DNA of 64,000 bases. It comes from Octopus sinensis. Lineage: Eukaryota. A program made the position numbers and the translations under genes. The stretch covers positions 10,788,001-10,852,000 of the forward strand of contig NC_043018.1 in assembly GCF_006345805.1 (NCBI RefSeq), written 5' to 3'. Shown one piece after another: positions 2,352 to 63,577 of this stretch; the first letter of the stretch is position 1; each line of letters starts with the position of its first letter. The notes under the pieces were generated by a model, which saw only the letters and a program-made list of their open reading frames with translations, was not told the DNA's origin and made no database searches.

Positions 2352-3190
2352 TGTATTCAATACCCAATAAATACACTGGACCTGGAGGGAATGCAATCCC
2401 AGAGGCACAGTCAGTGCGAGAGCTGAGTATTTACATGAGTAATGATGCAACCTTTCATGTGCATGTTGCTAAATTGGCAATGCAATGTAGGCAGCTGACC
2501 GGATGGATTCTTAGAGCCTTTAGAACAAGAGACCAGGAAACCATGATGGTCCTCTGAAGGACACTTGTCCTAAGCCACTTTGACTATTGCTCTCAGCTAT
2601 GGTCACCATCCAGTGTCAAGTTAATCACAGAACTTGAGGCGATCCAACGAAGCTACACGAAGAAGATAGCCTCTGTGCAGCATATAAGCTATTGGGAAAG
2701 ACTCAAAAGATTAAGACTCTATTCCTTAGAGTGTAGGCAAGAAAGATATGCCATAATATACATCTGGAAGATCCTGGAAGGACTTGTCCCAAACTTTGGC
2801 ATCGAGAGTTACACAAATGCTAGAACTGGGCGCCACTGCATAGTGCCAAGGACTCCAAATTTGCCATCAAGATGTAGGACAAGATACTGTGATAGCCTGG
2901 GCTTCAGAGGTCCACAGCTCTTCAATATCCTCTCGAAGGACCTGAGAGACCTGCATGGGGTGGATGCAGATGTCTTTAAAATAAAACTGGATCTCTTCCT
3001 GTCAGGTGTCCCAGATGAACCAACTTCATGGCAGGAGGTGCAGATGAGGGCAGCTGCATCGAACTCTCTCATGCACCAAATGGCAATTGCTAAAAAGCAT
3101 TCATGAACTAAAATCATGTAGCAACACCGAATGGCGGTGCCCCAGCATGGCCACAGTTCGTGAGCTGAAACTAGATAAGATATAAAATAT
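2352..3190 (+). mobile_element. CR1-group LINE, 5'-truncated 3' end with 3' UTR; single frame 2351-3106 broken by one TGA at 2555-2557
   Basis: ORFs 2351..2557 and 2675..3106 are in the same frame. Motifs: GWILRAFRTRD, DYCSQLWSP, YWERLKRLRLYSLE, FRGPQLFNIL, VPDEP. Homologous to the C-terminus of the ORF at 18621..20150. Confidence 0.9.
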
Positions 3191-3220: not shown

Positions 3221-3349
3221 TGTTGAAGAGCGTAGGCTGGAAATATAAAAGACTTTCTCACTTTCCGAGCGTCAAACTAATACACCTGCTTGTTGTTTAT
3301 ACTGTTTATACATCATTCTTCGTGTTTTACTTTTCTGTAAATTTCAACC
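3221..3349 (+). repeat. Short variant of repeat family D (hammerhead-like motif, degenerate)
   Basis: gaagagcgtaggctggaaatataaaagac...actaatacacctg is shared with 6341-6903, 30855, 49108 and 56158. Flanked by (TA)n. Confidence 0.75.
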
Positions 3350-3484
3350 AATATATATATATATATATATAGATATATATTTTTTTTTTTACTTGTTTCA
3401 GTCATTTGACTGCGGCCATGCTGGAGCCACCGCACTCTTATATATATATTATATATATATATATATAATATATATATATAATTT

Positions 3485-12450: not shown

Positions 12451-12954
12451 ATCATATATACCGTCGTATATATGTATATATGTATGTGTGTCTGTGTTTG
12501 TCCCCTAACATCGATTGACAACCGATGCTGGTGTGCTTACATCCCCGTAACTTAGCGGTTCGGCATAAGAGACCGATAGAACAAGTACTAGGCTTACAAA
12601 GAATAAGTCCTGGGGTCGATTTACTCGACTAAAGGTGGTGCTCCAGCGTGACCGCAGTCAAATGGGTAAAACAAGTAAAAGAGTGAAGAGTATTTGTTCT
12701 GACCTTACATTCTGAGTTTGCAGACGTTGACTGCTTTTCATCAATAAAATAAGTTATAATTGAGCACCGCAGTCGATGTAATGGACTAACCCGCTTCCCT
12801 AAAAGATTTCAGGCCTTTAAGCCTTTAGTACAGTGGTTCGATTCCTTCGATTACTATTTTGCTCTCGTGGACAACTCATAGCATTTCGATGTTTAAAAAC
12901 TAGTTTCATAGAAACTTCTTTCAAAATTCCAATTTTGTTTTTCACACATTCACT

Positions 12955-16568: not shown

Positions 16569-17603
16569 GGAAACTTAGTTGTTGAAAAATCGATTCAAAA
16601 CAACAGCAACAAGGAATAAATAAAAAATAATAACATTTAAATTGAATTTACCAAAATATTTTCGTCGCTTTGAGACCGCGACCTGTTCCCTGACGACGAA
16701 AATAATTTGGCAAATTAAATTTAAATGTTGAAGTGAATCTAACGGTTTTTGTGTTTTTAAATGGCTTATAAACACCTTCCACGCTGCAATTGTTTTTGTT
16801 TCAGCACCGTCTCAGATCAGGTCACTTGCTATGCAAGTACATCTCCGCAATAGCAACAACGCTAACTGCCAAAGCAACAATATATATATATATATTTATT
16901 TATTTATCTTGTACGTGTTTCAGCCATTAGATTGCGGTCATGCTGGGGCAACACCTTGAATTTTTAGTCGAACCAGTCGCGCGCGCGTGTTAAATAAAAA
17001 AAAGAGACAACAAAGTCAGGTCAGTGTGAAATTTCTAGGAGAATTATAGTACGGTAGCACTTACATAGCCTTACCTGCCATTCGGGGTCTTCTGAGTACC
17101 AAAGCGTCTCATATATATATATGAGAAAGTTCAAAAGGTCAACTTATTCTCATTAATCTGTAAGTACTGAGAGAAGAAAACAAAAGACTTTAAATATATT
17201 TTTTTGAATGCTGATTTTTCTGCGACCTAACATTCTACAAGCTGGTGCTCCAACATGGCCGCAGTCCAATGACGGAACAATTTAAAATATTTTTAGAAAA
17301 TAAAAAAACCGAAGGGTTATAAAAAATTTTTTAATAGATTTCGCTGTTATTTCTAGCATGTGGAGATAAAAAATTCTTTAAGGCCGCACTCTAATAACTG
17401 CAACAAGTAAAAAGCGAAAAAAAATTCTGGGGTTGATACGTTCAACCAAAAATTCTTCAAGGCGGTGCCCCAGCATGACCGCAGTCTAATGACTGAAACA
17501 AGTAAAAGGTAAAAAAAAACGAAAATTAATCGAAAAATATAACCGTGGGGCTTTTGTCCGTGGGTCTTTCGTCCGTGGGGCTTTTGTCCTATACATGTAT
17601 ATG

Positions 17604-18620: not shown

Positions 18621-18640
18621 CTAATTATATATTCTGCGCT

Positions 18641-18675
<35 letters not shown>

Positions 18676-20150
18676 TTTTCCAGACGTATATCACTGTATA
18701 TCTCTCCTTGCCTTCGCTCTAGGGAGAAGAGTTGTAATACTTTCAGTCTTTCCCAGTAGCTGATATGTTGCATTGAGACGATCTTCTTAGTGTAGCTTCT
18801 TTGAATTGCTTCGAGTTCTGCTGTTAGCTTTATATTGTGTGGTAACCATAGTTGGGAGCAGTAGTCCAAGCGGCTGAGGACAAATGTCTTCCAAAGGACC
18901 ATCAGTGTCTCCTTCTCTCTTGTTCTGAAATTTCGGAGAATCCATCCAGCTAGCCGTCTGCATTTTATCACCAAATTAGTAATATGCACTTGGAAAGGGG
19001 AATCATTGCTCATGTCAATGCCCAGGTCACGCACTGATTTTGACTCAGGGATTGCAATTCTTCCCGGGCCAGTGTATCCAGTCTGCATGTCGTTTACCTT
19101 TGTGTGCCGGTAGCGCAGGGCCTGGAACTTCACTGCATTAAACTGCGTGTTGTTGTCCTCAGCCCACCTGTATATTGTATCCAACTCTTGTTGCAGATGT
19201 GCAATATTTCCAGGGTTTTGTATTGTGTGGGAGACTTTTGTGTCATCTGCATAGCTAGCAAGGGTGGCCATCTTAGCAACTGAGGGCATGTCTGAAAGGG
19301 CCACTATGAACAGCAGTGGCCCCAAGACAGTGCCCTGTAGAACACCGCTTGTTATTTGTGTTTCCTTGGAGATGACTCCATTGGTCACAACTGCCTGTCT
19401 TCTATCTTTTAGGAAGTTGTGCAGCCACTCTCCAAGTTTTCCGCCTATGCCGAGACCACGCAGTTTGTGACAGATCATACCATGGTCAACTTTATCAAAG
19501 GCTTTTGAAAAGTCGAGATATATCACATCTACATTTGAGCCACTTAGTAGCTGTTTTAACACCCAGTCATAGTGTTGCAGGAGCTGTGTTAGGCAGCTTC
19601 TACCTGGTCGAAATTCATGCTGGGTGTCAGTCAGCAAGTTATTTTCTTCAAGGAACATGATTAGTTTCTTGGGGACTATTCGTTCCATGACTTTGCTGAT
19701 GTGTGAGGTCAGAGAGATAGGCCTATAATTTTTAGCATCTGCTCTGCTTCCTCCCTTATGGATAGGGCATATTACCCCCTCTTTCAATTTGACTGGGAGC
19801 TTACCACTTGCAAGAGAGCTCTGAAAAAGAAGCTGTAGCGGTTTTGCAAGGGCTCGTTTGCACGATTTGAGAAGGATCGCTGGAAATCCATCAGGTCCAT
19901 CAGCTGAGTTTGTGTCAATCTCATCTATGGCCAGTGTGATGTCATTATCTTCAATGTTGATGTACTCAATTTTTGCCTCTTTGGCCACAGGTAAAGTGGG
20001 AAAGAATTCTTCTGTGTTGTTTACTTGCATGTGTCCTAGAAGTGTAGTGAACACACTTTGGAACTGTTCGTTCAGTATTTCACTTATCCTCGTGGGATTT
20101 CCTGTGAGGGAGCCATCTTTTTGGAAGAGAGGTCCTATTCTCTGGCGCAC
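18621..20150 (-). CDS. Non-LTR retrotransposon reverse transcriptase (CR1-group ORF2 fragment, 509 aa; last ~17 aa are read-through into microsatellite)
   Basis: RT motifs YRPISLTSHISKVMERIV, QHEFRPGRSCLTQL, VIYLDFSKAFDKVDHG, SGVLQGTVLGPLLF, catalytic YADD, RDLG. The endonuclease domain is missing. Confidence 0.9.
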
Positions 20151-23368: not shown

Positions 23369-24163
23369 TTAAATGATAAACTTCCGAAAAGTTTTACAGA
23401 ATTTTACAGTTCCAGTTATGGATTGGATCTGTAGTCTTCGAATTCGCTTTTTCCTTTCTGGTTTTGAGAAGCCTAATTTCTCAAGATTGGTATTTAGGCA
23501 GCGTGTTACATATCTCAGGGGCCCAATAATTACAGGTATAAACCTGAACTTGCAATCTGGATAGAGTAACTGCAGATTTCTCAATAGTTCAGCATAAGTG
23601 CTCTCTTTCTCATTGATCTTCAGCTTTATGTTATCTTCCGCTGGGCAGCTAATTTCCACAACTGTGCACAGTTTCTCTTCTCTATCCCAAATCATTATAT
23701 CAGGTCTGTTGTGCTTACATTTTATTGAGGTCTTCACTGGCACATTCCACCAGTATTCCTTTTTATTATGAGTGGCTATGGCTTCTACCACATTGTGGGT
23801 TTTTATTTCTTTGTCCTTGGGGTTATCCTTCCGACGGATTTCATTATAGAGTATCATAGCTACAACGTCATATCTCATCGGTAAATAATACCGTGATGAC
23901 ATTTTCGCACAACTGCTTATGATATGGGTGATATCTTCAGTGTGAACTCTACAAAGTCTGCATCGGTTGTCACATTTTACGGCTTTTTCTGCACCTCTAT
24001 CCCTTTTGTGCATCAAGTACTTGGTTGATATTTCCTGTTCCTGGATTGCAAACGCATACCCTTCAAAGTGGGAGGTAGTAATCCAGTTATTCGTCCATGA
24101 TAAACTACTTTGATGATCGATGTTACTATCACCACGGAGCTTTCTGCTAATGTGTCCATGCAT
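23369..24163 (-). CDS. C-terminal zinc knuckle plus RLE (PD-D/ExK) domain of an R4/Dong-like retrotransposon, 264-aa fragment
   Basis: HFEGYAFAIQEQEI, CRLC-x5-E-x3-HI-x3-C, RYD (RHD motif), NRPDI-x3-D-x7-VEISCP, IPVIIG. Confidence 0.88.
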   Translation of the reverse strand: MHGHISRKLRGDSNIDHQSSLSWTNNWITTSHFEGYAFAIQEQEISTKYLMHKRDRGAEKAVKCDNRCRLCRVHTEDITHIISSCAKMSSRYYLPMRYDVVAMILYNEIRRKDNPKDKEIKTHNVVEAIATHNKKEYWWNVPVKTSIKCKHNRPDIMIWDREEKLCTVVEISCPAEDNIKLKINEKESTYAELLRNLQLLYPDCKFRFIPVIIGPLRYVTRCLNTNLEKLGFSKPERKKRIRRLQIQSITGTVKFCKTFRKFII

Positions 24164-28980: not shown

Positions 28981-29029
28981 TATATAGATACATGGCATAT
29001 ACAGTCCTTTACACTTAAAAGCATACACC

Positions 29030-29098
29030 CATGGGCATACATACATACATACATACACACATACATACACGCATACATACATACATACAGACATACAT

Positions 29099-29129
<31 letters not shown>

Positions 29130-29137
29130 TACATACA

Positions 29138-29171
<34 letters not shown>

Positions 29172-29318
29172 CATACATACATACGTACATGCATACATAC
29201 ACATGCCTAAATATATGTATGTGTGCATATGTGTATATATGCAGGGATGTATAATCACAAAAATTAATTTCGTATGCAAATATACTTTCACACTGGCACC
29301 ACAAACCACGCACGCACA

Positions 29319-29410: not shown

Positions 29411-30410
29411 TTTATTAATTATTTTCATGTTGCGAGCCCCAACTGCTGACCCCAAAATATTTTGTTTCTGTTTGTCTTGACCTCTCAAACCACCCACTGT
29501 CCACCAACGCATTCATTCTCGATGTGTCTCATCATGGCCGCATTGGACTGCAGCCATTATGAGACACAGCATCGAAGAATTCAGACAACTTAATGAATAT
29601 CATCGGGTCACTAGCATAACTAGAATGTGTGCCGCCCGGGCGAATTTTTGTGTGCCGCCTGAAGCGATCCTTCAGCATGCCGCCCCAGGCCCACACAGAA
29701 ATACATATTGCTTACAGCAGACCCAAAAGTGGTGTCACCCTTATAAAAGTGCCGCCCATGGCGGACTGCCCCCTCCGGCTCCCTCGTATCGGGTGCTTAT
29801 TCTGACGATCGTCTTTTGCCTAACCGCCAGGTAAACGGAGTCCAAGACAAAACCCACCTTTGAACCATGAGGATGAGGGGCAGACCACGGAGGAGGTTCT
29901 GAATGGCTTCGGTACAGCATTAGGTTGCTGTAAGACTTTAAATGAGTGATTCTCAACCGAGGTCCATATAAGATTTTTGGGTCTTCGTAAAAAAACAGTA
30001 AATTGGGGACCACAGTAGTATTTTAAGAGCCCTAGAAAAAAATTTGCTTCAGATGTATGTATTGTTATGTATTGCAAGAAATAACTAGGTTTCTTTTTCC
30101 GACATTTTATGGTTACGGTTAGGGTTTTAGGGTTAGGGTTAGTGTTGAGGAAAAGAGTCAAAATTGAAGAAGTTGTGGGGGGAAAGCGGGGGCAAAAATT
30201 TCGCAATGCCGACTTTTGGCAATTTTTCGGAACCTTTGTATCTGAAAACGGGGATTTTTGATAAAAAAAAAATTACAAAAATAAACAAATTTGGGAGAAA
30301 ATGGGGGTGGGGTCTTACCGCTCCAGTATGGCCGCAGTCAAATGATCGAAACTAGTAAAAGATTAAAAGAATAAATATGTACTGCTCGAGGCGAGAAATT
30401 TAGACAGATA

Positions 30411-31505: not shown

Positions 31506-31854
31506 ACAAACACTCACGAATATATATAGAGAAGTATAGACTGCAGAAAGACTGACATATATGTATATATATCTTTCATTTGTTTTTTTTCTTTAAAGCC
31601 TAGTACTTATTCTATTGGTCTCTTTTGACGAACCGCTAAGTTACGGTGACGTAAACACACCATTTGACTACGTCCATGATGGGGCACCGCCTTGAAGGCT
31701 TTTAATCGAAGTAATCGACCCCAGAAATTATTCTTTTTAAGCCAAGTACTTATTCTATCCGTCTCCTTTGCTGAACTGCTAATATTACAGTAACGTAAAC
31801 ACAGCAACACCGGTTGTCAAGCAGTGGTAGGGGACAAACATAGATGCAAAGACA

Positions 31855-32300
31855 TACACACACACACATACACACATATACATACATACATACGTACGTA
31901 CATACATACATACATACATACATACATACATACATACGTACATACGTACGTACGTACGTACATACATACATACGTACGTACGTACGTACGTACGTACATA
32001 CATACATACATACATACATACATACATACATACATACATACATACATACATACATACATACGTACGTACATACATACACACGTACATACGTACGTACGTA
32101 CGTACATACATACATATATACATACATACGTACGTACGTACACACACACATACATACACACCCACACCCACCCACCCACCCACCCGTACGTCCATCCATC
32201 CATCCATCTGTCCATCCGTCCATCCATACACACATACACACACACACACACATACACACATACAAACATACATACACACATACACACATACATACATACA
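31855..32300. repeat. Compound (TACA/TACG/CCAT/CA)n microsatellite
   Basis: Direct inspection. Confidence 0.95.
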
Positions 32301-35240: not shown

Positions 35241-35924
35241 GTAATTTGTTGTTAGGCGTGCCATTCAGATGACCCCCGCAGTCCACAGCTTGGCCTTGAA
35301 CGCTTTACACGTAGGTTTGACCTGCTAGAAATAGCAGCAAATTCTCCATCAAGCCACATCTTATTCGTTTTAAAATAAAGTATAGTTGTTAAAAATATAT
35401 ATACTAGCGACAAAGGCAGAATTAGAACCGAGAGGTAACACGTTTAAGTGAGAACAAAGTTGCTGATATACACAAAGACGCTTCGACATGTTGGAACATC
35501 TTTCATTAGATGCATTGTTACGACTATAGCTAATTTAGCGCGAAAAAATATATAGCAACCAAATTTACTTCGAGTCAATCCAGCTGCTAGAAATAGCAGC
35601 AGTATTTCCTTCACATCGCAATCTAATTTTAAATTAGTAAAGAGTAAACTGGACAATGTTGTTCTAGGTATAGGTATACTAAAAACACGACATGATTACG
35701 GCTGGAATGCTCAGATTGTAGATCTCCACTCTAAGGGGTAGACTTGGGGTGGGGTTAAAAAAGTTTATTGAGATAATTAGTAATAGTCTTTACCATCTGT
35801 TAATTAACTCTAATGAATGACAAGAGAATACATTCATATGTGAGTGAAGGTGTACATACATACAGGTGTGTGTGTGTGTGTGTGTGTGTGAGCGCGTGCG
35901 TGCGTGTATCTTTTGCCTTATTTT

Positions 35925-36139
35925 TTACTTGCTTCAGTCATTAGACTGCGGCCATACTGGTGCACCGCCTTCATGAATTTTAAGTCGAGTGAATCGACCC
36001 CAAAACTTTTTTCTTAAGCCTGGTACTTAATTTATTGATGTCTTTTGGAAACCACTTAATTACTGGTACGCAAAAACACCAGCTGCGGTTGCCAAGCGGT
36101 GTGTGGGACATAGACACAAAGATGCGCACGCGCACACAC

Positions 36140-36177
<38 letters not shown>

Positions 36178-36340
36178 GGCGGGCTTCTTTCAGTTTCCGT
36201 CTACCAAATCCACTCACAAGGCTTTGGTCGGCCCGAGGCTATGGCAGAAGACACTTGCTCCAGGTTCCACGTAGTGGGACTGAAACCGGAACCCCGTGGC
36301 TGGGAAGCAAACTTCTGACCACTCAGCCACGCCTGCGCCT
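35925..36340 (-). mobile_element. SINE-B (diverged subfamily)
   Basis: Reverse complement of the head, body and ccagtatggccgcagtctaatgactgaagcaag tail. Confidence 0.8.
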
Positions 36341-39160: not shown

Positions 39161-39437
39161 TTATTTGCCAATTACCACTGTCCGGTCCCATAATAGTCAT
39201 TGAAATCCAAAAATCCTTGTTTACCGTTTTAGCATACGCTTTCCTGTCTGGTTTTCACAAAGACTGTCGGTTAACATGCTGTTTACCGTCGCAAAAGAAA
39301 GGAAAGTAAATTGTGATAAAAACCGGAAGTGACGACACTGACATCCCATAAATTCATGCGAACTATGTATGTATAACTAATGTATATAATGTATATATAC
39401 TTAATATAACATGAATACTGTAGATATATATTTTATA

Positions 39438-39733
39438 CAGGCGTGGCTGTGTAGTAAGAAGTTTGCTTTTCAACCACATGGTTTTGGGTTCAGTACCACT
39501 GCGCGACACCTTGGGTAAGCGTCTTCAACTATGGCCTCAAAAGCCTTGTGAGTGGATTTGGTAGACGGAAAATGAAAGCAGTCCGACGTCCGATCACCGA
39601 AGTTAAGCAAGGTCGAGCCTAGTAAGTACTTAGATGGGTGACCGCTTGGGAAACCTAGGTGCTGTGAGCATCTCACCTAAGGCGGCGGTGCTCCAGCATG
39701 GCTGCAGTCAAATGACTGAAACATGTAAAAGAG
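39438..39733 (+). mobile_element. Chimeric SINE-B head / 5S rRNA segment / SINE-B tail
   Basis: SINE-B 5' half to about 39586, 5S-derived 39587-39671, then ggcggtgctccagcatggctgcagtcaaatgactgaaac. Confidence 0.85.
39587..39671 (+). pseudogene. 5'-truncated 5S rRNA pseudogene segment (approximately nt 36-120)
   Basis: cgtccgatcaccgaagttaagcaaggtcgagcctagtaagtacttagatgggtgaccgcttgggaaacctaggtgctgtgagcat aligns by eye to invertebrate 5S rRNA, including box A (agttaagc) and box C (gatgggtgaccgc). Confidence 0.88.
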
Positions 39734-39741
39734 TGTATATA

Positions 39742-40125
39742 TAGGCGTAGGAGTGGCTGTGTGGTAAGTAGCTTGCTTACTAACCACATGGTTCCGGGTT
39801 CAGCCCCACTGCGTGGCACCTTGGGAAAGGGTATTCTACTATAGCCTCGGGCCGACCAAAGCTTTTTGAGTGGATTTGGCAGACGGAAACTGAAAGAAGC
39901 CCGTCGTATATATATATATGTGTGTATGTGTGTTTGTTCCCCTAACATCGCTTGACAACCGATGCTGATGTTTTTACGTCCTCGTAACTTAGCGGTTCGG
40001 CAAAAGAGACGGATAGAATAAGTACTAGGCTAACAAAGAATAAGTCCTGGGGTCGATTTGCTCGACTAAAGGCGGTGCTCCAGCATGGCCGCAGTCAAAT
40101 GACCGAAACAAATAAAGGAATAAAA
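39742..40125 (+). mobile_element. SINE-B, full length, in tandem directly after the chimera
   Basis: aggcgtaggagtggctgtgtggtaag ... gaccgaaacaaataaagga. Confidence 0.9.
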
Positions 40126-40224
<99 letters not shown>

Positions 40225-41659
40225 AGAAAGAGAGTGCGTGTGTGTGTGGTGTGTGTGTGTCTTTGTGTCTGTGTTTGTCCCCCGCCACCGCTTGATAATC
40301 GGTGTTGGTGTGTATACGTCCCCGTAACTTTGCGGTTCGGCAAAAGAAAACCGATAAAATAAGAACCAGGCCTTATAAAAAATAAGTACTGGGGTCGATT
40401 CGTCCAACTATATATCTTCAAGGTGAAGCCCCAGCATGACCGCCGTCTATTGACTGAAACAAGGAAAAGACAAACGATGAAAACAATCACATAACCGCCA
40501 TTGATGCACAGAATGAGATCCATGAATATTTCTTTATTATCCCTAAATCTGTCTCGCCCCACAAGCCCCTGAAGCCATGAAAATAAATCATTAGCAGTCC
40601 CCTATTCTGGCCTAAGTTTCTTTTGTCGTCGCTTACACATTTTATCGCAATTTACTTTCATTGTTTTAGAACGACTTACTTTCACTTTTTTTACGAAGCT
40701 AAACTACATCTTTAAACCAGATTATGACCCTAAGCATTTTCCCTCAATAATCTTTCTTTAAACTTATCAACTTCGCTACTTCCCCACTCACCCAAATCTA
40801 CCCCCTTGTTTTCAGCAATCTCGGAACCGATGTTACTTCTACACCCCCTCCTCGTCTTACTTTTCTAAATAACAAGCTAACGAACTAATTTTCTTATTGT
40901 ATGTTCACCGTTCTTCACATTGTTTCTGTTCCTTCGTTGTTAATGGCATCGTTCCCAAAACTTAACCAAACAGTAATTCGTTTGCCACAAGTCTTTTTTA
41001 CTCTATTAACGTCGACAATTCTTACAATAAACAAACATTTCTTCCATTCCTACAACCTGGGATTCATTTGTGACGTAGCAAATTCTGGCAACCAACAGAG
41101 GCGTAACAAGGCGAAGTCAGTTGAGGAGGGGAAGTTGATCTTTGGATACAGATGTGATAGGGTGCAAGATTTATCTCTGATCTATGAGGCTTTCTGATGA
41201 AGGTGAAGGCGCCCCGAAATGTCTTTTAGCACCTAAGCGCTGAGAACTTTGCTTTGTCAGTGGCTACCATTTCTTTTAAATGAGGTGTCAGAACATCGAT
41301 ATAGTCACTTCATCTACAAGAAATAGCAGCCAAATCTCCCTCAAGTTATGTCCTACTATTGTTTATAATTTTTTTTTGTAATTGAAAAATATATTGGATA
41401 ATGCTGTGCTAAATAGTTTTGTTTGAATAAGCCACGGCTGGAACGTATTTAATCATAGGTGTCCTTGAAAATGACTGACCGAGGACAAAACAACAACATC
41501 TTGAATGAAACCAAGGGCGATAAACTTCTGTAAATCAAGACAGCGACAGGGTTTCGAATACAGGTACACACACACGAACACACGCGCATACATTGAACAT
41601 GTGCGGGTATATTTGTATGTATGCATACGTGTGTACGCGTTTAAGTATGTTTATGGATG

Positions 41660-47813: not shown

Positions 47814-48537
47814 GGATCTTTTCGGTTTGAACGGCAGTTTTTTAAAATAATTTCCACGTAACTAAACACTTTAAAACTTCGTATACTGGTAGAATGTGTT
47901 TATAAAACATCTTTTTTCTCTTGGTTTTATTGAGAAAATTCTATAGTTTGTAAGATATTTGTTGTTTTTCTTCAATTTCTGCAATTTCAACCAATCAATG
48001 ACGTCTATTGAGGTGAAAACATTCTGTGCTGTATGAATATGTCCCTCGTTTAAGAAACAGATTGGGTTTTTCTTTCTTTTATTCTTTTACTTGTTTCAGT
48101 CATTTGACTGCGGCCATGCTGGAGCACCGCCTTTAGTCGAGCAAATCGACCCCGGGACTTATTCTTTGTAAGCCCAGTACTTATTCTATCGGTCTCTTTT
48201 GCCGAACCGCTAGGTGACGGGGACGTAAACACACCAGCATCGGTTGTCAAGCAATGCTAGGGGGACAAACACAGACACACAAACACATACACACACACTT
48301 ATATATATATATATACACATATACGACAGGCTTCTTTCAGTTTCCGTCTACCAAATCCACTCACAAGGCATTGGTCGGCCCGGGGCTATAGCAGAAGACA
48401 CTTGCCCAAGATGCCACGTAGTGGGAGTGAACCCGGAACCATGTGGTTGGTTAGCAAGCTACTTACCACACAGCCACTCCTGCGCCTATATTTTATTCAC
48501 ATTTGTGAAGAAAAAAAGATACCCTTCCCCCCACCCC
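47814..48537 (-). mobile_element. MITE-G, truncated and split by a SINE-B insertion
   Basis: MITE sequence at 47814-48069 resumes at about 48492 (cacatttgtgaagaaaaaaagatacccttcc). Confidence 0.8.
48075..48487 (-). mobile_element. SINE-B, full length, nested in MITE-G
   Basis: Reverse complement of the consensus, with MITE sequence on both sides. Confidence 0.9.
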
Positions 48538-48926
48538 AGTACTTTTGTTTTTTAAGCCTGGTCCTTATTTTAGCGGCGACTTTTACCGAGCCGCTAAGTT
48601 ACGGGGACGTGAACACATCAACACCAGCTGTCAAGTTGTGGTGGGGGACATAGACAGACCATAGACACACACACGCACATACACATACGACGGACTTCTT
48701 TCGGTGTCCGTCAACCGAATCCACTCACAAGGCTTTGGACGGCCCGAGACTATAGTAGAGGACACTTGGCCAAGGTGCCACACATTGGGACTGAACCTGG
48801 AACCATGTGGTTGAGAAGCAAGCTTCTTACCACACAGCTACGCCAGCTCCTTTTTATTAATAATTTTTGTGAAATCAATAAAAATGCTATGAAACCTTTA
48901 ACAATGAATTTCAATAATCAATTTCA

Positions 48927-49301
48927 ATAGGAGTGGCTGTGTGGTAAGTAGCTTGCTTACCAAACACATGGTTCCAGGTTCATTCCCACTGCGTGGCACC
49001 TTAGGCAAGTGTCTTCTACTATAGCCTCGGGTCGACCAAAGCCTTGTGAGTGGATTTGGTAGACGGAAACTGAAAGAGGACCGTCGTATATGTGTATATA
49101 TATATATGAGACGCCATGATTGATCGTTAGCCACTACACACATTTTTTTTCTCTCCTTGTTTTTTTTCTGTGTATCTTTCTGTCGAAGAGCGTAGGCTCG
49201 AAACGTAAAAGACTTTTTCTATTCCTGAGCGCTATACTAATACATCTGTTTGTTTTGTACACCACCTGTCTTCGTCTTTTGTTTTTTTCCGTAAACTTTC
49301 C

Positions 49302-49333
<32 letters not shown>

Positions 49334-49510
49334 TTGTTTGTCCCCCAAACATCGCTTGTTGGTGTGTTTACGTCCCCGTAACTTAGCGGTTCGGCAAAAG
49401 AGACCGATAGAATAAGTACTAGGCTTGCAAAATCGATTTGCTCGACTAAAGGCGGTGCCACAGCATGGCCACAGTCAAATGACTGAAAGAAGTAGAAAAA
49501 GTAAAAGAAC
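48927..49510 (+). mobile_element. SINE-B split at its internal microsatellite by a family-D insertion
   Basis: 5' half 48927-49100, family D 49108-49302, (TG)n and 3' half to about 49510. Confidence 0.85.
49108..49302 (+). repeat. Repeat family D (~195 bp) with a hammerhead-like motif at 49175-49212
   Basis: tcttt-ctgtcga-a-gagc-gtag-gctc-gaaac-gta-aaaga, flanked by (TA)n on both sides. Confidence 0.85.
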
Positions 49511-50461: not shown

Positions 50462-51110
50462 TGACACAAGATCAAAGCTTACTTACCAAAAAACTACCAA
50501 TCTATCGTTCTTCAAAACGGTTCTGATTCTAAATGCAGATTATGCGACACATTTAACGAAACAATAGACCATCTCGTCTCGGGATGTTCTGTGCTGACAC
50601 CAAACAAATGCAAAAATCGCCACGATAGGGTAGGATAGTATTTACATTGGAACATATGTAAATACTACAAAATCTACACTCCTGCTTACTGGTATGAAAC
50701 ATCAACTTGAGCTAATCGTTGAAGGTAAAAATGTCATTTTCCCCTGGGATTTTCCAGTCAACATTGACAGAACGATCCAGGCTAATCGACCAGACATAAT
50801 TATTAAAGATAGGGAAGAAAATACTTGTAGACTAATAGATGTAAGTGTTCCTATTGATAAAAGTATATCTGTAAAGGAATTTGACAAACTAATTAAATAT
50901 AACGACCTGGAAATTGAAATACAAAAGATGTGGCATCTTAAAGCGAGAACTGTTCCTGTTATTGTAGGTGTCCTTGGTATGATAAAAAAGGGATGTCAGA
51001 AACGTCTAGATAGCATCTCAGGAGAACCATATCTCAGAGAAATCCAGAAGGTTGTTGCTGACAAGTACTGCCCACATCCTTAGAAAAAACCCTATCCATT
51101 TAGATGTCTG
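50462..51110 (+). mobile_element. Second R4/Dong-like family, 5'-truncated and decayed
   Basis: QDQSLLT..KCRLCDTFNETIDHLVSGC..RHDRVG*, then WDFPVNIDRTIQANRPDIIIKD...LIDVSVP...VPVIVGVLGMI (ORF 50694..51083). Confidence 0.85.
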
Positions 51111-60785: not shown

Positions 60786-61459
60786 GTCCCGGGTGACCAA
60801 AGCTTTGTGAGTGGATCTGGGAGACGGAAAATGAAAAGCATGTCGTATGTATGTATGTATGAGTGTGTGTGTGCGTGCGTGTGTGTGTGTGTGTGTGCGT
60901 GCGTTTGACCCCACCACCACCGCTGGTGGTGTGTTTACGTCCTCGAAACTTAACGGTCCGGCAAAAGATAGAGATAGAATAAGTACCAGGCTTATAAGTA
61001 GAGATAGTCCTGGGGTCAGTTTGTTTGATTAAATCCTTCAAGGCGGTGCCCCAACATGGCCGCAGTCGGATGAGTGAAACAAATACAAGAATGAAGGAGT
61101 TCGATCCCCAGCATAAGAACGGCATTATTGTTTTAACGCAGTGCCTCAGCATGGCCACAGTTTAATGACTGAACCAAGTAAAACGTAAAACACATTATAA
61201 TATATAATGGAGAATGCCCAGCAGACCGCAATAGTCAATACCAAAGAAATATATTTTTAAATTTACATTTTCTTCTTTGCGGTCCGATACCAAATAATCC
61301 ATGGCCTGGTGACCAGAGATCGCTGTGTAAGGTATTTTAAAAATGGCGCTTGTCCTCTACAAGAGTTGTCAAACTCAAGATAATTCGGCTTTTTATTCCT
61401 TACCTCTTTGCGAGCTCTTTCGCTATAAAATGGCCAAGTTGTTATGAGTAAGTGATTTA

Positions 61460-62245: not shown

Positions 62246-62589
62246 GCTAAGATGTTTCCGTAATTTTGATGAGAGAAACATCATCTCTGAACTGGTTGAA
62301 CCACTTCTAATAAGCTCTGCTGTTGAAAGATTCTTTCACTTCAATGTATAAAAGACGTCAGTAAAAATATTACAAGATTTTGTTGTCTGATATCGTCTGT
62401 CATCAAACTTGATACTTTTTTCCGAGTGTGTGTGCGTGTGTGTGTGTGTGTTTGCAATGTGTTGTATGTGGGCATTATTGCTTGTATGTGTCGAAATGTA
62501 TGTGAGACAGGGCCTCTATCAAGCAAACGCACGCACACATTTTATATATATGTACGTGTTTAGTGTATGTGTGTGCAAGAGATATACAA

Positions 62590-62739
62590 ATATATGTATA
62601 TAAATACACATACACACACACGCACACAAATATGTACATGTATGTATATATATATATATATATGCATAATGTATACCTGTATACTTATTACACATATTTT
62701 ATATATACTTATATAGATAGATACATACATACACATACA

Positions 62740-62790
<51 letters not shown>

Positions 62791-62961
62791 TATATATATA
62801 TATATATGCACACACACGCACACACACACACACACAGAGATATATATATATGTATATATATACACGCGTATATTTGTATGTGTGCGTTTATATAGGCGCT
62901 TGTATTACGTACACACACACACACACACACAAACGCACAGACACACACACACAAACGCACA

Positions 62962-62997
<36 letters not shown>

Positions 62998-63577
62998 ATA
63001 CGCTACCAGTAAAGATAGATACTCTAAAGAAACAGTGAACCTCCAAATGTGACACTGACGAGACAACTTTCGCGCCACAAAGACATTCTGATCGTCTGCA
63101 ATTATTGAATTTAGATTTGCACGGGGGTGGGGGTGTACGAAATCGCTCTCTCTCTCCCTCTCTCTCCTCTCTCTCTCTCTCCCCTCTCTCTCTCCCCCTC
63201 TCTCTCTCCTCCTCTCTCTCCCCCTCTCTCTCCCCTCTCTCTCTCCCCTCTCTCTCTCCTCCCCTCTCTCTCTCCTCCCCTCTCTCTCTCCCTCTCTCTC
63301 TCTCTCCCCACTCTCTCTCTCTCCTCCCCTCTCTCTCCCCCCTCTCTCTCTCTCTCCCCCACCCTCTCTCTCCCCTCTCCCTCTCTCCCCTCTCTCTCCC
63401 CCTCTCTCTCTCCCTCTCTCCCCCTCTCTCCCCTCTCTCTCTCCCACTTTCTCTCTCCCCCTCTCTCTTTCTCTCTCCAACTTCTCACTGGATATTTGTT
63501 TCTATCATACATACACTCACATTTATCTATCTGTCTGTCTGTCTGTCTGTCTATCAGTCTGTCTGTCTGTCTGTCTA

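What the first reader, a model, noticed from the sequence alone, without database searches (positions are those of the whole stretch)
39438..39733. Tripartite chimera: tRNA-SINE head + 3' 85 nt of 5S rRNA + LINE-type SINE tail
Seen: a SINE-B whose microsatellite and central body are replaced by a 5S segment reaching the natural 5S 3' end. The left junction falls on a short shared word (SINE ...cccgtcgt versus 5S ...ctcgtccgat, joined at cgt). The element holds tRNA-type A/B boxes and the 5S internal control region (box A, box C) in one unit that keeps the retrotransposition tail. Established: LINE RTs make chimeric retrocopies by template switching, and 5S-containing SINEs exist in other animals. 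Inference: a double template switch (SINE tail to 5S RNA to SINE head), possibly the founder or a member of an undescribed tRNA/5S composite SINE family.
Basis: partly seen in the sequence, partly recalled or inferred. Interest (0 to 1): 0.7.

Follow-up and report, generated by a model that had tools for sequence, protein, structure and literature searches.

The report
5S–SINE-tail retrocopy nested in older SINE
The apparent three-part mobile element is most likely an older short repeat (SINE) split by two later insertions, one of them a small fusion of the last 85 bases of 5S ribosomal RNA with a SINE tail; this is an ordinary nested insertion with one mildly interesting fused retrocopy.

Summary
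The three segments are present as described. They are a tRNA-type SINE head (39438-39589), the 3' 85 nt of 5S rRNA (39586-39670) and a 62-nt SINE tail (39673-39734). The 5S piece scores 57.2 bits on Rfam RF00001 as a 5'-truncated match, E=3.6e-12, model positions 35-120.

They are probably not one retrocopy. The microsatellite and central body were not replaced. They lie 0.5 kb downstream on the same strand: (TA)n(GA)n(TG)n at 40126-40262, then body and tail at 40264-40470. Removing 39590-39734 and the full-length SINE at 39745-40125 (9-bp target duplication GTATATATA) restores a canonical SINE.

Subfamily markers agree. The head and the downstream tail are of an older type, and the tail next to the 5S piece is of the younger type.

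What remains is a two-part unit, 5S(35-120) joined at its natural 3' end to a young SINE tail, inserted at the edge of the host SINE's internal TA microsatellite. The best reading is a single template switch from SINE RNA to 5S rRNA, followed by 5' truncation. A 5'-truncated copy of an undescribed 5S-headed SINE family cannot be excluded, because no octopod genome could be searched.

The parts
39438..39589 (+). Head of an older ('O-type') tRNA-derived SINE copy. It ends at ...CCGACGT, exactly where canonical copies begin their internal (TA)n microsatellite. [quoted passage not shown]
   Evidence: Alignments (87.5% identity to the young consensus). It has the O-type state at 2 of 3 head markers, a transition from the O state at the third, and the young state at none.
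39586..39670 (+). 3' 85 nt of 5S rRNA (model positions 35-120), covering the box A, IE and box C positions and reaching the natural 3' end. Bases 39587-39589 (cgt) could belong to either the head or the 5S piece.
   Evidence: RF00001 5'-truncated match, 57.2 bits, E=3.6e-12, all internal helix pairs canonical. Forced full-length alignment 35.9 bits. Unique in the window.
39673..39734 (+). Last 62 nt of a young ('Y-type') SINE: CTCACCTAA + GGCGGCGGTGCTCCAGCATGGCTGCAGTCAAATGACTGAAACATGTAAAAGAGT. Together with the 5S piece it forms insert 1.
   Evidence: Y state at 3 of 3 tail markers: no 10-bp insert, GCTCC, GTCAAATGA. 2 mismatches in 51 against the Y consensus core. It carries the SINE-specific GTCAAATGA and CTCGACTAA-like sequence, which both LINE 3' UTR copies lack.
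39735..39743 (.). GTATATATA: the left copy of the target-site duplication of insert 2, and part of the host SINE's internal microsatellite.
   Evidence: The same 9-mer directly follows insert 2 at 40126-40134.
39745..40125 (+). Insert 2: a full-length young SINE with head, (TA/TG)n, body and tail.
   Evidence: 9-bp TSD found.
40126..40262 (+). Internal microsatellite of the host SINE, (TA)n(GA)n(TG)n. Its first 9 bases are the right TSD copy of insert 2.
   Evidence: Sequence. Canonical copies have (TA)n(TG)n at this position.
40264..40470 (+). Central body and O-type tail of the host SINE. This is the 'missing' part of the element whose head is at 39438-39589.
   Evidence: BLAST to SINE positions 179-375 on the same strand. 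Body 85.6% and tail 81.8% identical to the young consensus. Tail is O type at 3 of 3 markers. Body markers are 4 O, 3 Y and 1 other.
2675..3190 (+). Context: C-terminal ORF and 3' UTR of the partner LINE. Its last ~50 nt are homologous to the SINE tails and end in TA-rich repeats.
   Evidence: Sequence. Same LINE family as the RVT_1 ORF at 18621-20150(-). The related LINE 3' end on locus L001 has the same tail followed by (TA)n.

Best explanation
An older SINE copy is interrupted, at and within its internal (TA)n microsatellite, by two later retro-insertions in the same orientation. The older copy consists of the head at 39438-39589, the microsatellite at 40126-40262, and the body and tail at 40264-40470.

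Insert 2 (39745-40125) is an ordinary full-length young SINE with a 9-bp target duplication.

Insert 1 (about 39588-39734, 147 bp) is a two-part retrocopy. The partner LINE's reverse transcriptase began on the tail of a young SINE RNA at a nick in the TA repeat and copied 62 nt. It then switched template to the 3' end of a 5S rRNA molecule and copied 85 nt back to position 35. The truncated cDNA was joined to the target at a 2-3 nt microhomology (GT/CGT) at the 5' edge of the microsatellite.

The apparent tripartite element is therefore a by-product of nesting.

Shown: the segment identities, the downstream remainder of the host SINE, the target duplication of insert 2, and the marker states.

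Inferred: the template switch, the order of events, and the microhomology-mediated 5' joining.
For: - Seamless reconstruction. The sequence reads head ...GTCCGAC[GT] | insert 1 | GTATATATA | insert 2 | GTATATATAT(AT)n(GA)n(TG)n TCTGTGTTTGTCCCCC... body, tail. Canonical copies read ...CCCGTCGT(TA)n(TG)nGTCTGTGTTTGTCCCCC.
- Subfamily markers. The downstream tail is the older type at 3 of 3 markers. The tail beside the 5S piece is the younger type at 3 of 3. The head has the older state at 2 of 3 markers and the younger state at none.
- Divergence from the young consensus. Head 12.5%, downstream body 14.4%, downstream tail 18%, against 2/51 for the core of insert 1's tail. Fisher p=0.04 against the pooled old parts.
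- The SINE-internal TA microsatellite is a proven target in this window. Insert 2 has the TSD GTATATATA. A second SINE (48929-49494) carries a ~190-bp foreign repeat in the same microsatellite. LINE and SINE 3' ends run into TA repeats.
- The 5S piece ends at model position 120 with intact internal helices. It abuts SINE-specific tail sequence that the two LINE 3' UTR copies lack.
- Chimeric retrocopies of 5S rRNA with a retroelement 3' end, and SINE births by a switch from SINE RNA to 5S rRNA, are documented (bioRxiv 10.1101/2025.02.02.635956; PMC3272025; PMC4824008).
Against: - Insert 1 has no recognisable target duplication beyond 2 bp. However, only one of five full-length young copies examined has a clear one (the neighbour's 9 bp); a second has only an 8-bp low-complexity match.
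- The marker evidence is thin. Only two older-type reference copies have heads, only 3 head markers exist, and the downstream body is mixed (4 older, 3 younger).
- The divergence contrast rests on a 51-nt tail core.
- No flanking duplication of the whole host SINE was found. The only candidate is a non-adjacent 10-mer, CATGAATAYT, at 39410 and 40521.
- The one-off origin of insert 1, as opposed to family membership, is untested.
Confidence: 0.6

Rival explanations
1. The nesting is as above, but insert 1 is a 5'-truncated copy of an undescribed 5S-headed (SINE3-type) SINE family of octopods. A full-length member would be about 120 nt of 5S-derived head fused to the ~62-nt SINE/LINE tail. The template switch happened once, in the family's founder, not at this locus.
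For: - The 5S piece covers the whole internal control region and is fused directly to a tail that retrotransposition can use.
- 5S-headed SINEs that share a tail with a co-resident tRNA SINE are known, for example HaSE3/HaSE1 (PMC3272025) and vertebrate SINE3 (PMC4824008).
- Finding such a unit in one arbitrary 64-kb window is more likely if thousands of copies exist (inference).
- Several other short elements in the window share the same tail, so the tail is used modularly.
Against: - There is no second copy in 64 kb that holds about 20 tRNA-SINE copies.
- The held literature describes no cephalopod 5S-derived SINE.
- The intact 5S helices and the near-consensus tail fit a direct copy of mature 5S rRNA equally well.
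Confidence: 0.25
2. Head, 5S piece and tail are one retrocopy made by two template switches (SINE tail to 5S rRNA to SINE head). The microsatellite, body and tail downstream are an unrelated 5'-truncated SINE that happens to lie next to it.
For: - All three parts are collinear and in the same orientation, with a short shared word (cgt, ancestrally tcgt) at the head/5S junction.
- 5'-truncated SINE halves that start near the microsatellite occur elsewhere in the window, for example 12461-12682 and 31661-31856.
- Multi-part chimeras from repeated template switching are known in mammals (literature cited in PMC4824008).
Against: - It needs a same-strand, older-type 5'-truncated half to start at exactly the position where the head stops, directly downstream. 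I estimate this at under 2% from the density of such halves in the window.
- Head and tail are of different subfamilies, so three different RNAs would be required.
- No target duplication flanks 39438-39734.
- No second copy of either junction exists in the window.
Confidence: 0.07
3. The 5S piece and the 62-nt tail are two independent events. They could be a 5S pseudogene fragment and a severely 5'-truncated SINE inserted side by side, or cDNA fragments captured during repair of a break in the fragile microsatellite.
For: - Tail-only fragments embedded in TA repeats exist, for example 3387-3433(-).
- Insert 1 lacks a target duplication.
Against: - The 5S piece ends within 2 nt of its natural 3' end exactly where the tail begins, with no intervening TA repeat.
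- 5S RNA alone lacks the tail that SINEs share with this LINE, so it would not be expected to be mobilised on its own. This is an inference from the shared-tail principle cited in PMC4824008 (Kajikawa and Okada 2002).
Confidence: 0.05

Closest known systems
5S rRNA/LINE-1 and U6/LINE-1 chimeric retrocopies of mammals (Buzdin et al. 2003, as cited in PMC4824008; census in bioRxiv 10.1101/2025.02.02.635956)
   Same: A small Pol III RNA is fused to the 3' end of a retroelement in a single insertion. For U6 the orientation is the same, and the small RNA is joined at its natural 3' end. The explanation is a template switch by the reverse transcriptase during target-primed reverse transcription.
   Different: - The 3' partner here is a SINE tail (62 nt), not the LINE itself.
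- The LINE is not L1. Pfam gives only RVT_1; its relatives carry the names and endonuclease domains listed.
- Human 5S/L1 chimeras are mostly antisense and keep the 5' part of 5S (positions 1-45 or 1-90). Here the 5S piece is in sense and keeps the 3' part (35-120).
- No target duplication is seen here.
SINE3 / 5S-derived SINEs, e.g. zebrafish SINE3 and Helicoverpa HaSE3 (PMC3272025; Kapitonov and Jurka 2003, cited there)
   Same: 5S-derived sequence, including the box A, IE and box C region, joined to a tail shared with a co-resident tRNA-derived SINE and its LINE. The proposed origin is a switch from SINE RNA to 5S rRNA.
   Different: - Those are multi-copy families that begin at 5S position 1 and usually keep a body between head and tail.
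- Here there is one copy, it lacks 5S positions 1-34, and the 5S piece abuts the tail directly.
- Family status is untested.
Ordinary nested SINE-in-SINE insertion at an internal microsatellite
   Same: A host element is split into head and remainder with nothing lost. The insert sits in TA repeats. A second insert beside it has a clean 9-bp duplication. A further example lies in the same window at 48929-49494.
   Different: Nothing essential differs. The only unusual content is the 5S part of insert 1.
Hybrid or 'jigsaw' SINEs of molluscs, built by template switching between modules (PMC4758252, PMC4824008)
   Same: Mollusc SINEs are modular (head, central domain, LINE tail), and modules are thought to be exchanged by template switching.
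   Different: Those are established multi-copy families with conserved central domains. Here the apparent composite is explained by nesting, and no copies are known.

Membership tests
5S rRNA (Rfam RF00001) | Covariance-model score at or above the gathering score (38 bits) | tested here: met
   57.2 bits, E=3.6e-12 as a 5'-truncated match to model positions 35-120. The forced full-length alignment scores only 35.9 bits.
5S rRNA (Rfam RF00001) | Complete molecule with helix I (positions 1-34 present), i.e. a possible gene | tested here: not met
   Model positions 1-34 are absent. The sequence upstream is SINE head and pairs poorly. It is a fragment, not a gene.
Template-switch chimeric retrocopy (U6/L1 or 5S/L1 type) | The 3' part is the 3' terminus of a retroelement RNA, with the small RNA immediately 5' of it | tested here: met
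   39673-39734 is the terminal 62 nt of the young SINE, in the same orientation and abutting the 5S piece.
Template-switch chimeric retrocopy (U6/L1 or 5S/L1 type) | The small RNA is joined at its natural 3' end | tested here: met
   The match reaches model position 120 at 39670. The tail starts at 39672-39673.
Template-switch chimeric retrocopy (U6/L1 or 5S/L1 type) | One target-site duplication flanks the whole chimera | tested here: inconclusive
   Only GT (2 bp) is repeated, at 39588-39589 and 39735-39736. Only one of five full-length young SINEs in the window has a clear duplication.
Template-switch chimeric retrocopy (U6/L1 or 5S/L1 type) | Unique junction, not propagated | not testable with these tools
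   No octopod genome is searchable. The positive-control SINE pattern gave 0 hits in the metagenome collection.
SINE3 (5S-headed SINE family) | 5S-derived head containing box A, IE and box C | tested here: met
   The piece spans model positions 35-120, which include the control-region positions. This is sequence presence only, with no evidence of function.
SINE3 (5S-headed SINE family) | The element begins at or near 5S position 1 | tested here: not met
   This copy starts at position ~35. That would be compatible with 5' truncation of a family member.
SINE3 (5S-headed SINE family) | Many dispersed copies sharing the 5S/tail junction | not testable with these tools
   There is one copy in the 64-kb window. 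A genome-wide search was impossible.
   The remainder of the head's own element lies at 40126-40470. Head and tail differ in subfamily.
   There are none in the window. Scans of public collections were empty, but those collections hold no octopod DNA.
Window's tRNA-derived SINE with internal microsatellite | Head with A/B boxes, then (TA)n(TG)n, central body and LINE-related tail, in that order | tested here: met
   The reconstructed host element (39438-39589 plus 40126-40470) has all four modules in order.

The most novel reading that the evidence does not exclude
The 5S(35-120)+tail unit is a 5'-truncated member of a so far undescribed 5S-headed SINE family in octopods that borrows the tail of the dominant tRNA-SINE. 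A less likely variant is that the nested head+5S+tail arrangement has itself been transcribed from the head's Pol III promoter and has seeded a composite family.
Probability: 0.25. Interest if true: 0.45.

Novelty: new member of a known kind. Interest (0 to 1): 0.22.

Why it matters
As it stands this is mainly a caution. In SINE-dense genomes whose SINEs carry internal TA microsatellites, nested insertion readily mimics composite elements. Flanks of at least a kilobase must be read before template switching is invoked.

The residual two-part unit is a plausible example of a non-L1 LINE reverse transcriptase switching from a SINE RNA to 5S rRNA in a cephalopod. That is the step thought to give birth to 5S-headed SINEs.

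If the junction proved to be multi-copy, it would, to my knowledge and in the papers I could search, be the first 5S-derived SINE reported in cephalopods. That would be a modest addition to SINE biology.

Tried and rejected
- Protein-database probes. I used a 68-aa antisense ORF spanning the head/5S junction. The word-indexed search found no candidates. The exhaustive HMMER search returned 50 hits, and the seven I inspected were antisense translations of ordinary full-length 5S genes or chance matches. None was chimeric and none was a SINE-head ORF, so the library does not sample octopod SINEs and the negative result is uninformative.
- Exact-product look-ups for four window ORFs: none is on record.
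- Junction pattern scans of the metagenome and prokaryote-genome collections gave 0 hits. The positive-control SINE pattern also gave 0 hits in the metagenome collection, so these negatives are uninformative too.
- Literature. No cephalopod 5S-derived SINE turned up. SINE sequence strings are not found in any held paper. The 1983 Walker and Doolittle paper on marine-invertebrate 5S rRNA sequences is not held, so the divergence of the 5S piece from a cephalopod 5S could not be measured. An initial impression of about 15% divergence rested on a mollusc 5S recalled from memory. I dropped it because the helix differences are compensatory and all internal pairs are canonical.
- Target duplications. 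None is convincing for 39438-39734 or for the reconstructed host SINE. The only candidate is a non-adjacent 10-mer with one mismatch.
- A LINE rather than a SINE as donor of the tail: rejected. Both LINE 3' UTR copies (window 3126-3190 and locus L001) lack GTCAAATGA and the CTCGACTAA-like lead-in that insert 1 has.
- ARAGORN and Rfam at gathering threshold found nothing in the window.

Full report
**What is at the coordinates**

The window is dense with a ~400-bp tRNA-derived SINE, with about 20 copies or fragments in 64 kb. The canonical order of this SINE is:
- a head ending ...GAAAGAAGCCCGTCGT;
- an internal (TA)n(TG)n microsatellite;
- a central body starting GTCTGTGTTTGTCCCCC;
- a tail, CTCGACTAAAGGCGGTGCTCCAGCATGGCCGCAGTCAAATGACTGAAACAAGTAAAAGAGT.

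At 39438-39589 there is a SINE head. It is 87.5% identical to the consensus of the young copies and has an 8-bp deletion.

Next comes 5S rRNA. In a forced full-length alignment the match scores 35.9 bits, below the gathering score of 38. Searched as a fragment, it is a 5'-truncated match to model positions 35-120 at 39586-39670. It scores 57.2 bits, E=3.6e-12, and every internal helix pair is canonical. It is the only 5S-like sequence in the window.

Then 39673-39734 is the last 62 nt of the SINE.

So are the 'cgt' overlap at the left junction and the 5S piece reaching its natural 3' end.

Directly after the tail comes GTATATATA (39735-39743). It is followed by a full-length young SINE (39745-40125), then GTATATATA again. 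This is a clean 9-bp target duplication.

After that comes a long (TA)n(GA)n(TG)n tract (40126-40262). Then, on the same strand, come a SINE central body and tail (40264-40470), which BLAST places at SINE positions 179-375 (sequence).

The head at 39438-39589 stops at the last base before the microsatellite. The downstream piece starts with the microsatellite. Removing 39590-39734 and the neighbouring SINE with one duplication copy leaves ...GTCCGACGT ATATATA(TA)n(GA)n(TG)n TCTGTGTTTGTCCCCC..., a complete canonical SINE with nothing missing and nothing duplicated.

The microsatellite and body were therefore displaced by insertions, not replaced.

**Subfamily and age**

The tails in the window fall into two types:
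- The abundant young ('Y') type reads CTCGACTA-AAGGCGGTGCTCC...GTCAAATGA.
- The older ('O') type has about 10 extra bases (AAAATTCTTC-like) before AAGGCGG, GCCCC in place of GCTCC, and GTCTAATGA in place of GTCAAATGA.

| Segment | Marker states | Divergence from Y consensus |
|---|---|---|
| Head, 39438-39589 | O at 2 of 3, a C-to-T derivative of the O state at the third, Y at 0 | 12.5% |
| Tail beside 5S, 39673-39734 | Y at 3 of 3 | 2/51 in the core |
| Downstream body, 40264-40401 | 4 O, 3 Y, 1 other | 14.4% |
| Downstream tail, 40402-40470 | O at 3 of 3 | 18% |

Marker states are, and divergences. The head markers come from the only two O-type copies that have heads (35920-36338 and 48533-48848). 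The tail core against the pooled old parts gives Fisher p=0.04.

The markers are few and the body is ambiguous, so this is supporting evidence rather than decisive. It does point the same way as the structure: the head belongs with the downstream half, not with the adjacent tail.

**How likely is the coincidence under the single-retrocopy model?**

About five 5'-truncated SINE halves that start near the microsatellite occur in the 64 kb. The chance that one lies within a few hundred bases downstream, on the same strand, is of the order of 1-2%. That is before requiring continuity at the exact base and the older subfamily type. This is my estimate from the counts.

In addition, the single-retrocopy model needs two template switches among three different RNAs. 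No target duplication brackets 39438-39734.

**Why the microsatellite is hit**

The partner LINE is present in the window. It consists of an RVT_1 ORF at 18621-20150(-) and its C-terminal region with 3' UTR at 2675-3190(+).

Its 3' UTR ends with GGCGGTGCCCCAGCATGGCCACAG...CTGAAAC... followed by TA-rich repeats. A related LINE 3' end on an ENA scaffold (L001) ends ...CTGAAACAGAGTAAAAGAGT(AT)n.

Elements whose RNA ends in TA repeats would be expected to prime preferentially in TA repeats (inference). Three observations fit this:
- The neighbour's duplication is GTATATATA.
- A 50-bp tail-only fragment sits inside TA repeats at 3387-3433(-).
- Another SINE (48929-49494) has a ~190-bp unrelated repeat inside the same internal microsatellite.

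**What insert 1 is**

Insert 1 is 5S(35-120) joined at its natural end to 62 nt of SINE tail.

The tail carries the SINE-specific GTCAAATGA and a CTCGACTAA-like lead-in (CTCACCTAA, 7 of 9 matches). Both LINE copies lack these. The first template was therefore a SINE RNA, not the LINE.

The simplest mechanism has four steps:
1. Target-primed reverse transcription starts on a young SINE RNA.
2. The enzyme switches to the 3' end of a 5S rRNA.
3. Synthesis stops at position ~35.
4. The cDNA joins the target at a GT/CGT microhomology. The host reads ...CGAC GT|ATAT and 5S reads ...CTC GT|CCGATC.

Insert 1 has no target duplication beyond 2 bp. This is not unusual here, because only one of five full-length young copies has a clear duplication.

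This mirrors the 5S/L1 and U6/L1 chimeras of mammals (bioRxiv 10.1101/2025.02.02.635956). It is also the step proposed for the origin of 5S-headed SINEs such as HaSE3 (PMC3272025; PMC4824008).

**What stays open**

A 5'-truncated copy of a real 5S-headed SINE family would look identical. Testing this needs a search of the host genome, which I could not do:
- The DNA collections hold no octopod sequence. The control SINE pattern gave 0 hits.
- The protein-space probes returned only antisense translations of ordinary 5S genes.
- Exact-product look-ups were empty.
- The held literature has no cephalopod 5S-derived SINE.

The host is an octopod by the best named relative of the LINE reverse transcriptase (Argonauta hians, 57% identity). 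From memory, the SINE looks like the dominant Octopus SINE, but this is unverified.

**Verdict**

- The sequence observation is real.
- The tripartite, double-switch interpretation is very probably wrong. I put nesting at about 0.85-0.9.
- A two-part 5S/SINE-tail retrocopy remains. I put a one-off template-switch chimera at about 0.6 and a family member at about 0.25.
- This is a new example of a known kind of event, of low to moderate interest.

Noticed in passing
window 48929-49494 (+), insert at about 49108-49300: Another SINE copy has its internal TA microsatellite interrupted by a ~190-bp unrelated repeat (...GAAGAGCGTAGGCTCGAAACGTAAAAGAC...). A copy of the same repeat lies at about 3222-3350, again flanked by TA repeats. 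This looks like a separate short element that targets TA microsatellites.
   Followed up: partly
window 18621-20150 (-) and 2675-3190 (+): Fragments of the partner LINE: an RVT_1 ORF of 509 aa, and a C-terminal ORF plus 3' UTR whose last ~50 nt match the SINE tails. The best named relative is a hypothetical protein of Argonauta hians (57% identity). Other relatives carry endonuclease domains (PF14529, PF03372), and one is named 'transposon X-element' polymerase.
   Followed up: partly
window 61095-61195 (+), 30265-30375 (+), 17190-17300 (+): Short sequences that carry the same ~45-nt tail but have different upstream parts. One starts GGAGTTCGATCCCCAGCA, which resembles a tRNA T-arm and acceptor end. 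The tail appears to be shared by several small elements or chimeras.
   Followed up: no
window 3387-3433 (-): A ~50-bp tail-only SINE fragment embedded in TA repeats on both sides. It is an extreme 5' truncation inserted in a TA microsatellite.
   Followed up: no
window 39410-39419 and 40521-40530: CATGAATACT and CATGAATATT form a 10-mer direct repeat with one mismatch. The copies lie 18 bp upstream of the host SINE head and about 50 bp downstream of its tail. This could be a remnant target duplication or chance (roughly 0.1-0.3 expected by my estimate).
   Followed up: partly
window 23369-24163 (-) and 50694-51083 (+): Two ORFs share a C-terminal motif (..NRPDI(M/I)I.DREE..C.(V/L)(V/I)(E/D)(I/V)S(C/V)P..). 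The first has a weak zf-RVT hit (E=8e-4, below the Pfam cut-off). They are probably remnants of another retroelement family.
   Followed up: no
window-wide, e.g. 31880-32160, 29016-29252, 62550-63000: Long TA/TG/CA microsatellites and cysteine/tyrosine-like repeat ORFs produce dozens of sub-threshold Rfam 'microRNA' matches (mir-297, mir-3149, mir-5014). All are low-complexity artefacts.
   Followed up: yes
locus L001 (ENA metagenome scaffold ERZ23491053, 2061 bp): A scaffold filed as metagenomic carries a LINE 74% identical in protein to the window's LINE, with the same 3' tail and (TA)n. It is evidently octopod-like host DNA within a metagenome assembly.
   Followed up: partly
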